This document shows positions 50,976-51,163 of a DNA stretch of 64,000 nt, one piece after another (the first letter of the stretch is position 1; every line of letters begins with the position of its first letter). A program made the translations under genes and the position numbers. The notes below the pieces were generated by a model, which was not told the DNA's origin, ran no database searches, and worked only from the letters and a program-made list of their open reading frames with translations. The stretch covers positions 248,326-312,325 of the IMG/VR virus record IMGVR_UViG_3300042010_000106. One strand, written 5' to 3'.

Positions 50976-51163
50976 ATTTCGAAGCAGATACACCGGTTCA
51001 CCTTGGCAACATTGCAGAAGCGGAAGCCGCATTTCAAGCGAAGCTCAAAGCAATGTTGAATCCCGATGTCGGCACCATTGGTCACGTTGATCACGGTAAG
51101 CCAAAGACATATCAACCGAAATTGAACCGCGCACAACGTCGCGCACAGAAGCACAAAAAATGA
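50972..51163 (+). CDS. 63-aa protein containing the EF-Tu P-loop peptide [11 protein letters not shown]
   Basis: GGAG RBS; ATGA overlaps on both sides; 11-aa match to the EF-Tu G1 motif. Confidence 0.7.
   Translation: [63 protein letters not shown]

What the first reader, a model, noticed from the sequence alone, without database searches (positions are those of the whole stretch)
51068..51100. Tiny protein carrying the EF-Tu P-loop peptide
Seen: the 63-aa ORF 50972-51163 contains [11 protein letters not shown]. Established: bacterial EF-Tu reads [14 protein letters not shown] at its G1 motif. The rest of the ORF is not EF-Tu-like: the TT is lost and it ends in a basic [12 protein letters not shown] tail. 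It is far too small to be a GTPase, yet has a good RBS and translational coupling. Inference: a molecular mimic or decoy for something that recognises or modifies this segment of translational GTPases (a toxin, defence sensor or EF-Ts), or a captured tuf fragment.
Basis: partly seen in the sequence, partly recalled or inferred. Interest (0 to 1): 0.7.

Follow-up and report, generated by a model that had tools for sequence, protein, structure and literature searches.

The report
Phage proteins displaying an EF-Tu peptide
A tiny, strongly conserved jumbo-phage protein displays an exact copy of the first strand and half of the GTP-binding loop of the host translation factor EF-Tu, and the same peptide turns up in at least 30 unrelated phage protein scaffolds, which points to an undescribed way for phages to engage EF-Tu or something that recognises it.

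Summary
ORF 50972-51163 (+, 63 aa) carries [11 protein letters not shown] at 51068-51100, identical to EF-Tu residues 14-24. The pattern is unique in the window and appeared in 0 of 100 shuffles.

It is a real gene. dN/dS against four relatives is 0.00-0.05 with dS up to 1.8, and 7 of the 11 motif codons vary synonymously. It is not a GTPase and not tuf debris.

It is one case of a wider pattern. Viral contigs and cultured phages of Vibrio, Erwinia, Salmonella, Pseudomonas, Burkholderia and Aggregatibacter hold at least 30 sequence-unrelated scaffolds with the core (V)NVGTIGH-[VIC]-D-[HYW], placed at the N-terminus, internally or at the extreme C-terminus. Only 4 of 38 keep the Walker-A Lys/Thr. 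About a third have a strongly basic tail (p about 1e-6).

Controls were negative: the EF-Tu G3 motif and the EF-G G1 motif never occur in foreign scaffolds. Homologues fetched through non-motif regions keep the motif invariant.

Best reading: a selected short linear mimic of the EF-Tu beta1/G1 element. The partner is unknown. My favoured target is the EF-Tu G domain itself, or a factor that sees this strand in non-native EF-Tu. No paper describes this.

The parts
50972..51163 (+). 63-aa ORF (stop codon included): the EF-Tu-peptide protein
   Evidence: sequence; 15 synonymous / 0 nonsynonymous codon changes vs L078; dN/dS 0.00-0.05 across four relatives.
50959..50963 (+). Shine-Dalgarno-like GGAGA, 9 nt upstream of the ATG
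   Evidence: Read directly.
51011..51058 (+). N-terminal amphipathic helix (residues 14-29), not EF-Tu-like
   Evidence: AF2 model, (H14-29, block pLDDT 72-77).
51059..51103 (+). Displayed EF-Tu beta1/G1 mimic [15 protein letters not shown] (residues 30-44). The core 51068-51100 is identical to EF-Tu residues 14-24; the Walker-A Thr is replaced by Pro.
   Evidence: Extended and low-confidence in the model. Variants in relatives: [24 protein letters not shown].
51101..51160 (+). Basic tail [20 protein letters not shown] (predicted helix at residues 53-62 = 51128-51157). This is the least variable part of the protein.
   Evidence: no nonsynonymous change in four relatives; one A-to-Q change in a fifth; pLDDT 88; basic tails are enriched among motif carriers.
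50748..50975 (+). Upstream 75-aa ORF with a C-terminal hydrophobic (membrane-like) segment; its stop overlaps the start of the motif gene (ATGA)
   Evidence: Present in relatives L081/L082/L083.
51160..51345 (+). Downstream 61-aa ORF with an N-terminal hydrophobic segment; its start overlaps the stop of the motif gene (ATGA)
   Evidence: Stays adjacent to the motif gene in L081 although two extra ORFs are inserted upstream.
51350..51589 (+). 79-aa ORF, third member of the block that stays together in relatives
   Evidence: window 50977-51589 aligns to L081 6010-6622 at 77.7%.

Best explanation
The ORF is a genuine accessory protein of a 312-kb rhizosphere/soil jumbo phage. It is two short helices joined by a flexible linker. 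The linker displays a copy of EF-Tu beta-strand 1 and the first half of its P-loop, and a basic helix follows. It cannot bind GTP like EF-Tu: the Walker Thr is gone and G2-G5 are absent. It belongs to a large, undescribed set of phage proteins that share only this EF-Tu-specific peptide, so the peptide behaves as a portable short linear motif under selection. I think it most likely works by competition. The displayed strand takes the place that this strand has in EF-Tu, pairing with the complementary part of the EF-Tu G domain (strands beta3/beta4, helix C) in newly made, nicked or nucleotide-free EF-Tu. Alternatively it occupies a factor that reads this segment only in such non-native EF-Tu. 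In the basic-tailed subclass, which includes this protein, the tail adds affinity for RNA, the ribosome or an acidic surface. The result would be a GTP-blind or tethered EF-Tu, meaning modulation or hijacking of the host's most abundant translation factor. Shown: the sequence, the selection, the recurrence, the specificity controls and the loss of nucleotide ligands. Inferred: that the motif binds anything, the identity of the partner, and the consequence.
For: Real gene under strong constraint: dN/dS 0.00-0.05 with dS up to 1.6-1.8, tighter than its two neighbours at 0.13-0.16. Recurrence: IGHVDHGK and NVGTIGH scans of viral contigs plus tblastn of cultured phages give 45 clusters, at least 30 of them credible, once the motif is masked. 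The motif sits at the N-terminus, internally or at the extreme C-terminus. What follows NVGTIGH in 57 short ORFs: D at +2 in 38, V/I/C/M at +1 in 46, H/W/Y/F at +3 in 40, GK[ST] intact in only 4 of 38. All 14 full-length EF-Tu genes read [IV]D[HN]GKT. Unbiased conservation: seven homologues of P0009 fetched only through residues 1-138 all keep [11 protein letters not shown] next to a hypervariable linker. The window family and the EaH2 family behave the same way. Specificity: the G3 motif DCPGHADY is found only in EF-Tu genes (65 loci, none in a foreign scaffold), and there is no EF-G-type equivalent. Why EF-Tu itself: the retained residues are those that face the rest of the G domain. These are the buried beta1 strand, Gly18/His19 bonded to helix C and His22 packed on Met112 (PMC4286738). 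The lost Lys24/Thr25 are the nucleotide ligands. The N-terminal piece can exist as a separate chain inside a folded G domain (trypsin-nicked EF-Tu 2HCJ and 5I4R). The motif lies in an extended linker. Basic tails are enriched: 11 of 32 clusters versus 6.1% of background ORFs, p 1.6e-6.
Against: No binding has been shown. The one co-folding test with E. coli EF-Tu returned 'no answer', which the tool states is not evidence either way. A trans peptide must compete with EF-Tu's own beta1 strand, which is present first and at very high effective concentration, and EF-Tu is extremely abundant, so bulk inactivation looks inefficient. Motif variants in phages (PaBG NVGTVGHIDH, Aaphi23 LNVGIIGH, the L081 relative's GTPGH) are not identical to the likely host EF-Tu, so strict homotypic pairing is not required. 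Asp21, the one outward-facing residue, is also largely kept, which would equally suit an external reader. All cultured carriers infect Pseudomonadota, which hints at a lineage-restricted partner rather than universal EF-Tu. Two thirds of the scaffolds have no basic tail. Transcription and translation have not been observed.
Confidence: 0.33

Rival explanations
1. Pseudo-substrate or decoy for an enzyme or sensor that acts on the EF-Tu P-loop region. Candidates include a TreTu-like ADP-ribosyltransferase that modifies Asp21, an EF-Tu-cleaving defence protease, or another toxin or defence effector of Gram-negative bacteria. The small protein would occupy that enzyme and spare EF-Tu.
For: An antibacterial Rhs toxin ADP-ribosylates exactly Asp21 within T16[11 protein letters not shown]27, and the Asp21 side chain is exposed (PMC9825190). 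EF-Tu is a repeated target or cofactor of defences: Lit, the type IV Thoeris caspase and Avs7. Asp at the equivalent position is kept in 38 of 57 carriers. An enzyme is a low-copy target, so a small accessory protein could titrate it. Cultured carriers are all phages of Pseudomonadota. In Erwinia phages the motif gene lies 5 genes upstream of a macrodomain (Appr-1-p processing) gene. The window gene sits in a hypervariable accessory island.
Against: The most invariant part of the motif is beta-strand 1, which is buried in native EF-Tu and invisible to an enzyme that reads the folded protein. TreTu needs the folded GTP form and contacts helix D and the switch regions. Some carriers lack the Asp or the whole loop (FLC9 family GHYSPG; 150E35 GHVGHGK). 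The known cleavage sites of Lit and the Thoeris caspase (R45, R59/G59-I60) are absent from most carriers, including this one. No PADLOC or other family hit was found.
Confidence: 0.25
2. Ribosome binder. The His-x-Asp-aromatic half-loop docks on the sarcin-ricin loop as it does in EF-Tu, the basic tail anchors on rRNA, and the protein blocks, tunes or shields the GTPase-associated centre.
For: Asp21 is the translational-GTPase signature residue and sits in a 23S pocket at G2655/C2658/G2659, close to A2662. Position 22 is kept aromatic or His. Basic or Trp/Arg-rich tails are enriched, and one carrier ends in a SEC-C zinc motif (L143). Jumbo-phage early proteins that bind ribosomes are known (PhiKZ014, PMC10914614).
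Against: If the sarcin-ricin loop were the target, any translational-GTPase loop would serve, yet no EF-G-type mimic exists and the EF-Tu-specific buried strand is the best conserved part. Two thirds of the scaffolds lack a basic tail. A 12-residue loop without its fold is unlikely to reproduce the EF-Tu/rRNA geometry.
Confidence: 0.15
3. A portable sticky strand of tuf origin whose present role has nothing to do with EF-Tu. It would be, for example, a self-association, chaperone-binding or degradation signal that spread among phage genes by recombination.
For: Terminal placement in many scaffolds, at the N-terminus or the extreme C-terminus, is typical of degrons and chaperone tags. Several families begin exactly at the EF-Tu start ([20 protein letters not shown]), which fits capture of a tuf 5' end.
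Against: Nothing then explains why the sequence stays so close to EF-Tu across at least 30 scaffolds and many host genera, or why only this tuf segment is used.
Confidence: 0.12
4. Inert debris: a decaying fragment of a captured tuf gene, or a chance ORF that is not expressed.
For: Broken EF-Tu genes do occur in viral contigs (L022, L066, L140). Short contigs of real bacterial tuf genes align to 51066-51100 with only 2-5 mismatches. No RNA run could be listed for the window stretch.
Against: dN/dS is 0.00-0.05 at dS up to 1.8. Four to seven nucleotide differences occur within the 33-nt motif between relatives with the peptide kept. Similarity to tuf ends exactly at the motif edges. The gene has a Shine-Dalgarno sequence and ATGA coupling. 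The gene is retained in five related phage genomes or contigs.
Confidence: 0.03

Closest known systems
Bacterial elongation factor Tu (GTP_EFTU, PF00009), residues about 10-24
   Same: Eleven consecutive residues are identical ([11 protein letters not shown]). In other carriers up to residues 1-24 or 1-40 are shared. All PDB sequence hits are EF-Tu at this position.
   Different: 63 aa instead of about 394. The Walker-A Thr is lost. There are no G2-G5 motifs and no domains II/III. The Pfam score is below the cut-off. It cannot be a GTPase.
The separate N-terminal chain of trypsin-nicked EF-Tu (PDB 2HCJ/2HDN; 5I4R chain C)
   Same: A short independent polypeptide holding beta1, the P-loop and helix A1. 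It shows that this segment can be supplied in trans to a G domain.
   Different: That fragment is produced by cutting folded EF-Tu and keeps Lys24/Thr25 and helix A1. The phage protein is separately encoded, lacks these, and has foreign flanks.
TreTu, the Salmonella Rhs toxin that ADP-ribosylates EF-Tu Asp21 (PMC9825190)
   Same: It acts on the very peptide copied here (T16-L27), which shows the loop is a target in bacterial conflicts.
   Different: It is a toxin, not a mimic. Its immunity protein TriTu works as a lid on the toxin, not as an EF-Tu look-alike. No link to phages is known.
EF-Tu-directed phage defences: Lit protease with the T4 Gol peptide, the type IV Thoeris caspase, Avs7
   Same: They show that EF-Tu is a recurrent battleground between phages and hosts.
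   Different: They cut at R45, R59 or G59-I60, or bind domains II-III. None is known to read residues 10-24.
PhiKZ014 and related jumbo-phage early proteins that bind host ribosomes (PMC10914614)
   Same: Small early accessory proteins of jumbo phages aimed at the translation apparatus.
   Different: No sequence relation was tested or is apparent. PhiKZ014 does not carry an EF-Tu peptide as far as I know (own knowledge).
Short-linear-motif mimicry by eukaryotic viruses, and designed aggregation-seeding peptides copied from a target's own buried strand (own knowledge, not checked here)
   Same: The same short host-derived peptide is embedded in unrelated viral proteins, often in disordered or terminal regions. 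The copy of a buried strand is flanked by charged residues.
   Different: As far as the searched literature shows, this has not been described for phages or for EF-Tu.

Membership tests
Translational GTPase / EF-Tu (PF00009 GTP_EFTU) | Complete G1 Walker-A motif GxxxxGK[ST] | tested here: not met
   GHVDHGKP: the Lys is kept but the Mg-binding Thr is replaced by Pro in all five family members.
Translational GTPase / EF-Tu (PF00009 GTP_EFTU) | G2 (switch I Thr), G3 (DxxG), G4 (NKxD) and G5 motifs, and domains II/III | tested here: not met
   The protein has 63 aa, with 20 residues after the loop and none of these motifs. Nothing elsewhere in the 312-kb genome supplies them.
Translational GTPase / EF-Tu (PF00009 GTP_EFTU) | Score above Pfam's gathering threshold | tested here: not met
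   13.8 bits against a cut-off of 26.5; only profile positions 5-21 are matched.
tuf pseudogene / captured gene fragment | Similarity to tuf continues beyond the motif, at DNA or protein level | tested here: not met
   Real tuf contigs laid on the window match only 51066-51100 and run on unlike on both sides. The flanks have no EF-Tu similarity.
tuf pseudogene / captured gene fragment | Relaxed selection (dN/dS near 1, frame-breaking changes among relatives) | tested here: not met
   dN/dS is 0.00-0.05 and the frame is intact in all relatives.
Provisional class: phage proteins displaying the EF-Tu beta1/G1 peptide (includes PHROG 27465 and 12626, function unknown) | Core (V)NVGTIGH-[VICM]-D-[HYW] in a scaffold that is otherwise not EF-Tu-like | tested here: met
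   The window protein reads [10 protein letters not shown] between foreign flanks. It matches phrog_27465 at E 5e-4 through this segment. The pattern is defined.
Provisional class: phage proteins displaying the EF-Tu beta1/G1 peptide | Motif conserved among homologues retrieved independently of it | tested here: met
   Window family: L292 fetched by N-terminal patterns reads [11 protein letters not shown]. P0009 family: invariant in 7 of 7. Caveat: the window family is shallow (5 sequences), and one member has Pro in the strand.
Provisional class: phage proteins displaying the EF-Tu beta1/G1 peptide | Common descent of the carriers (homology outside the motif) | tested here: not met
   After masking the motif the window family clusters with no other carrier. 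The only traces are weak tail similarity to Vibrio 150E35-1 (E 0.008) and Va2 (E 0.06). The class is defined by the motif, not by ancestry.
Known anti-phage defence or candidate defence proteins (PADLOC-DB) | Match to a PADLOC model | tested here: not met
   No hit at E 0.1 or better for the window protein, its two neighbours or seven other carriers.
Decoy or pseudo-substrate of a P-loop-directed toxin (TreTu-like) | Motif-dependent binding to, or modification by, such an enzyme | not testable with these tools
   Needs biochemistry. Only the existence of the toxin class was verified.
EF-Tu-binding protein | Predicted or measured complex with EF-Tu | tested here: inconclusive
   Complex prediction with EFTU1_ECOLI returned 'no answer' (score 0.00; partner pLDDT 33-34).

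The most novel reading that the evidence does not exclude
Phages of Gram-negative bacteria have repeatedly placed one portable EF-Tu-derived linear motif (beta-strand 1 plus a nucleotide-blind half P-loop) into unrelated accessory proteins. They would use it to engage EF-Tu itself or an EF-Tu-reading host factor. This would be a new, widespread class of host-takeover or counter-defence module, and the first clear case of short-linear-motif mimicry of a core translation factor by bacteriophages. The window's 63-aa protein would be a near-minimal example.
Probability: 0.5. Interest if true: 0.88.

Novelty: categorically new. Interest (0 to 1): 0.8.

Why it matters
EF-Tu is the most abundant bacterial protein. 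It is already known as a target or cofactor of several phage defences and interbacterial toxins. A selected, portable copy of one EF-Tu segment in dozens of unrelated phage proteins implies an interaction centred on that segment that nobody has described. The candidates are a new way to poison, hijack or tether EF-Tu, a shield for the ribosomal GTPase centre, or a decoy that would point to an unknown EF-Tu-directed immune or toxin enzyme. The question is directly testable, because a 12-residue peptide and several cultured carrier phages are available. It also corrects database annotations that call these proteins 'elongation factor Tu' or 'putative GTPase'. Finally, it suggests that short-linear-motif mimicry, well known for viruses of eukaryotes, also operates in phages.

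Tried and rejected
1. Co-folding of the 63-aa protein with E. coli EF-Tu returned 'no answer' (score 0.00).

2. AF2 model of the second scaffold family, P0009/A2, had mean pLDDT 42 and was uninformative.

3. RNA evidence. No RNA run was listed for the 3-kb stretch. One wastewater RNA-Seq-labelled run holds a 207-nt contig over 50790-50994 only, which cannot separate RNA from DNA. Expression is therefore unproven.

4. A phage-encoded 'rest of EF-Tu' that the peptide might complement: none in the 312-kb genome.

5. tRNA genes nearby, to test capture together with the thrT-tufB neighbourhood: none in the window.

6. Syntenic homologues in the closest cultured relatives, Erwinia Y3 and Dickeya JA11: absent. 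The gene sits in a variable island.

7. Pfam, PHROG, PADLOC and the ESM Atlas gave no functional name.

8. Literature searches for a described phage EF-Tu mimic found nothing (PMC7824862 checked).

9. Common ancestry of all carriers was rejected. Tail similarity between the window protein and L075 or 150E35-1 is suggestive but low-complexity and not significant as a family link.

10. GTP or nucleotide binding by the mini-loop was rejected, because Lys/Thr are lost in 34 of 38 carriers.

11. The strict EF-G pattern ISAHIDAGK gave 0 hits and was too narrow, so it was replaced by AHIDAGK.

12. The NVGTIGH scan certainly contains chance matches. By my own estimate about 100 are expected in the collection. 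About 12 singletons without the x-D extension were set aside as probable chance.

Full report
OBSERVATION

The window is the last 64 kb of a 312,325-bp virus record with direct terminal repeats. It is distantly related to the Erwinia phage Y3 and Dickeya phage JA11 jumbo phages and is seen in rhizosphere and soil metagenomes.

GGAGA lies 9 nt upstream of the ATG. Both junctions with the neighbouring ORFs are ATGA overlaps. No plus-strand terminator-like site occurs before 54381, so the gene lies inside a long co-directional unit.

The back-translated motif occurs once in the window, even with two mismatches allowed, and in none of 100 shuffles. Pfam GTP_EFTU matches only residues 32-48 and scores below its threshold. 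All 59 PDB sequence hits are EF-Tu at residues about 11-26.

IS IT A GENE?

Five related sequences were found: L078/L293, L082, L083, L081 and L292. Against the window:
- L078 has 15 synonymous and 0 nonsynonymous codon changes.
- L082 has 9 synonymous changes and 1 nonsynonymous (V39I).
- L081 has 22 synonymous and 8 nonsynonymous.

dN/dS is 0.00-0.05 at dS up to 1.6-1.8. That is tighter than the two flanking small genes, which score 0.13-0.16.

Inside the 33-nt motif the relatives differ by 4-7 nucleotides, yet the peptide reads [33 protein letters not shown] or VGTPGHVDHGK. The basic tail is the least variable part. Selection therefore acts on the protein. This excludes a dead tuf fragment.

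Real tuf contigs from the same metagenomes align only to 51066-51100 and diverge immediately on both sides. The phage genome has no other EF-Tu-like sequence.

Y3 and JA11 lack the gene. It sits in a variable island of small ORFs between a conserved helicase and a conserved 221-aa protein. In L081 two extra ORFs are inserted just upstream, while the 63-aa, 61-aa and 79-aa block stays together.

Direct evidence of expression was not obtained.

IT IS NOT ALONE

A tblastn search of cultured phages with the window protein, and with a genuine EF-Tu N-terminus taken from locus L073, found annotated 'hypothetical', 'EF-Tu' or 'putative GTPase' proteins. The carriers are phages of Vibrio, Erwinia, Salmonella, Pseudomonas, Burkholderia and Aggregatibacter/Haemophilus. 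The match to EF-Tu stops at residue 23-24 in nearly all of them.

Their sequences share an EF-Tu-like stretch, up to [21 protein letters not shown], joined to unrelated sequence of 35 to 245 residues.

Two degenerate DNA scans of 2.9 million viral contigs added many more. The motif lies at the N-terminus, in the middle, or at the very C-terminus (for example ...[11 protein letters not shown]-stop and ...[15 protein letters not shown]-stop).

After masking the motif, all-against-all BLAST gives 45 clusters. Setting aside about 12 singletons that look like chance matches, plus a few broken EF-Tu genes, leaves at least 30 mutually unrelated scaffolds.

WHAT EXACTLY IS CONSERVED

The NVGTIGH scan is unbiased for what follows the His. 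In 57 short closed ORFs:
- the next residue is V/I/C/M in 46;
- the second is Asp in 38 (about 5% would be expected by chance);
- the third is H/W/Y/F in 40;
- only 4 of the 38 keep GK[ST].

All 14 full-length phage EF-Tu genes from the same scan read [IV]D[HN]GKT. The unit is therefore beta-strand 1 plus the first half of the P-loop, with the nucleotide and Mg ligands discarded. Nucleotide binding is not the selected function.

To avoid circularity I fetched homologues of two carrier families using only sequence outside the motif:
- Seven homologues of P0009 were found through residues 1-138. They share 58-80% identity and some have large deletions. All keep [11 protein letters not shown] invariant, directly after a hypervariable, indel-rich linker.
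- In the Erwinia EaH2 family HVNVGTIGH is kept while the rest of the loop drifts (VDHSRS versus IGHAKT).

CONTROLS

1. The equally conserved EF-Tu G3 segment DCPGHADY occurs in 65 viral loci. Of these, 42 are closed full-length genes, 20 are cut by contig ends and 3 are plainly broken EF-Tu genes. None lies in a foreign scaffold. Phages therefore do not carry random tuf pieces.

2. The EF-G counterpart (AHIDAGK) gives full-length EF-G/Tet-like genes, one recurrent unrelated frame and random contexts. It gives no short ORF with the EF-G strand context, apart from one broken gene. The phenomenon is specific to EF-Tu.

3. A strongly basic C-terminal tail (net charge of +5 or more in the last 20 residues) is found in 11 of 32 credible clusters, including the window's. 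The rate in 1,808 background ORFs from the same loci is 6.1% (binomial p 1.6e-6). One carrier ends in a SEC-C zinc motif (L143). The basic tail marks a subclass, not the whole set.

STRUCTURE

The AF2 model of the window protein (4-sequence alignment, mean pLDDT 69) has helices at 14-29 and 53-62. The motif lies in an extended, lower-confidence linker between them. This is the layout of a displayed linear motif.

HOW IT MIGHT WORK

Published work establishes three points:
- Asp21 is the translational-GTPase signature residue. It is exposed in free EF-Tu, sits in a 23S rRNA pocket at the sarcin-ricin loop on the ribosome, and is the site ADP-ribosylated by the Rhs toxin TreTu.
- Gly18/His19 are hydrogen-bonded to helix C, and His22 packs on Met112.
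- EF-Tu is cleaved by Lit and by the type IV Thoeris caspase, and is used as a cofactor by Avs7.

The residues the phage proteins keep best are the buried strand, Gly18-His19, a hydrophobic residue at position 20 and an aromatic at position 22. In EF-Tu these face the rest of the G domain. The residues they discard are the nucleotide ligands.

Structures of trypsin-nicked EF-Tu show that the N-terminal piece can be a separate chain in a folded G domain.

On this basis I favour a competitive strand mimic that pairs with the complementary part of EF-Tu in nascent, nicked or nucleotide-free molecules, or with a factor that sees this strand only in non-native EF-Tu. In the basic-tailed subclass the tail would add RNA, ribosome or acidic-surface affinity.

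This is inference. The only direct test, co-folding with E. coli EF-Tu, gave no answer. The model also has a real kinetic and stoichiometric difficulty.

The main rivals are:
- A decoy or pseudo-substrate for a P-loop-directed toxin or defence enzyme. This is attractive on stoichiometry, on the Gram-negative host range of cultured carriers, and on the retained Asp. It does not explain why a buried strand is the most conserved part.
- A binder of the sarcin-ricin loop. The Asp/aromatic pair and the basic tails support it. The strict EF-Tu specificity weakens it.
- A generic sticky or degron-like strand of tuf origin.
- Inert debris, which is effectively excluded.

COMPARISON WITH WHAT IS KNOWN

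The protein fails every defining test of a translational GTPase other than part of G1, and it fails the tests of a pseudogene (see the membership table). PHROGs 27465 and 12626 hold some carriers under 'unknown function'. Some GenBank records call them EF-Tu or GTPase, which is misleading.

Full-text searches found no description of a phage EF-Tu peptide mimic. They included the motif string itself and a comparative review of jumbo phages.

The nearest concepts are short-linear-motif mimicry by viruses of eukaryotes and designed peptides that copy a target's own buried strand. Both comparisons rest on my own knowledge and were not checked here.

VERDICT

The 'mimic' reading is supported in general form, the 'captured fragment' reading is not, and the partner is unknown. 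I rate the class as categorically new at the level of described systems, with the caveat that function rests on sequence evidence only.

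Noticed in passing
L014, L016, L020, L023, L041, L046, L053, L055, L060, L074 (viral contigs of 60-620 kb): Complete EF-Tu genes of about 387-462 aa, many starting [19 protein letters not shown], lie inside huge-phage contigs. These phages seem to carry their own EF-Tu, unlike the window's phage.
   Followed up: partly
window 53508-54356 (+): A 282-aa protein with long acidic runs and an HPD tripeptide (...QASHPDKIMRF...). The same feature is in its Y3_160 and JA11_149 counterparts (THPDKC, THPDRC). 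It may be a J-domain-like co-chaperone mimic and lies just upstream of the tail-sheath gene.
   Followed up: no
L080:1262-4368 (Dickeya phage JA11): The helicase homologous to window 49084-50751 is annotated as two CDS (JA11_156 and JA11_155), separated by about 1.1 kb without annotation. This looks like an intervening element (intron, intein or homing endonuclease).
   Followed up: no
L001:1859-4713 (Erwinia phage Stratton) and L004 (phiEaH2): The motif gene gp214 is directly preceded by a RimI-like 'ribosomal-protein-alanine acetyltransferase' (gp213). A macrodomain 'Appr-1-p processing' gene (gp219) lies five genes downstream. RimI is reported to acetylate the EF-Tu N-terminus (own recollection, not checked).
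   Followed up: no
L143 (74-aa ORF) and L113 (194-aa ORF): L143 joins the EF-Tu motif to a C-terminal SEC-C-type zinc motif (CPCRSGKKFKKCHG). L113 joins an Aaphi23-ORF27-like motif protein to a Cys-rich domain that is encoded separately in Aaphi23.
   Followed up: no
More than 60 viral loci from the EF-G control scan (for example L175, L179, L183): A recurrent frame reading DVGRLGPVAHIDAGKRFAGVG appears in ORFs of 76-166 aa in many gut-type viral contigs. It is unrelated to EF-G. It may be a real small protein or an alternative frame of a conserved gene.
   Followed up: no
L089:2989-3576 (Vibrio phage Va2) and L085:2995-3714 (Vibrio phage 150E35-1): These longer carriers also keep a switch-I-like ERGITV / ERGITI segment, the region cut by Lit and the Thoeris caspase in EF-Tu. 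They share a tail motif NP[FY]..KHS.RQMN.R with Vibrio phage 1.244.A. They look like a reduced EF-Tu G-domain half with a basic tail.
   Followed up: partly
window 51127-51148: The DNA encoding RAQRRAQ in the tail is a near-perfect short repeat (CGCGCACA-ACGT-CGCGCACA). It also scores as a minus-strand stem-loop. It is probably just a consequence of the repeated peptide.
   Followed up: no
L081:5321-6014: In the most distant relative, two extra ORFs (104 and 133 aa) are inserted between the 75-aa gene and the motif gene. This shows the island is a hot spot for gene gain and loss.
   Followed up: no
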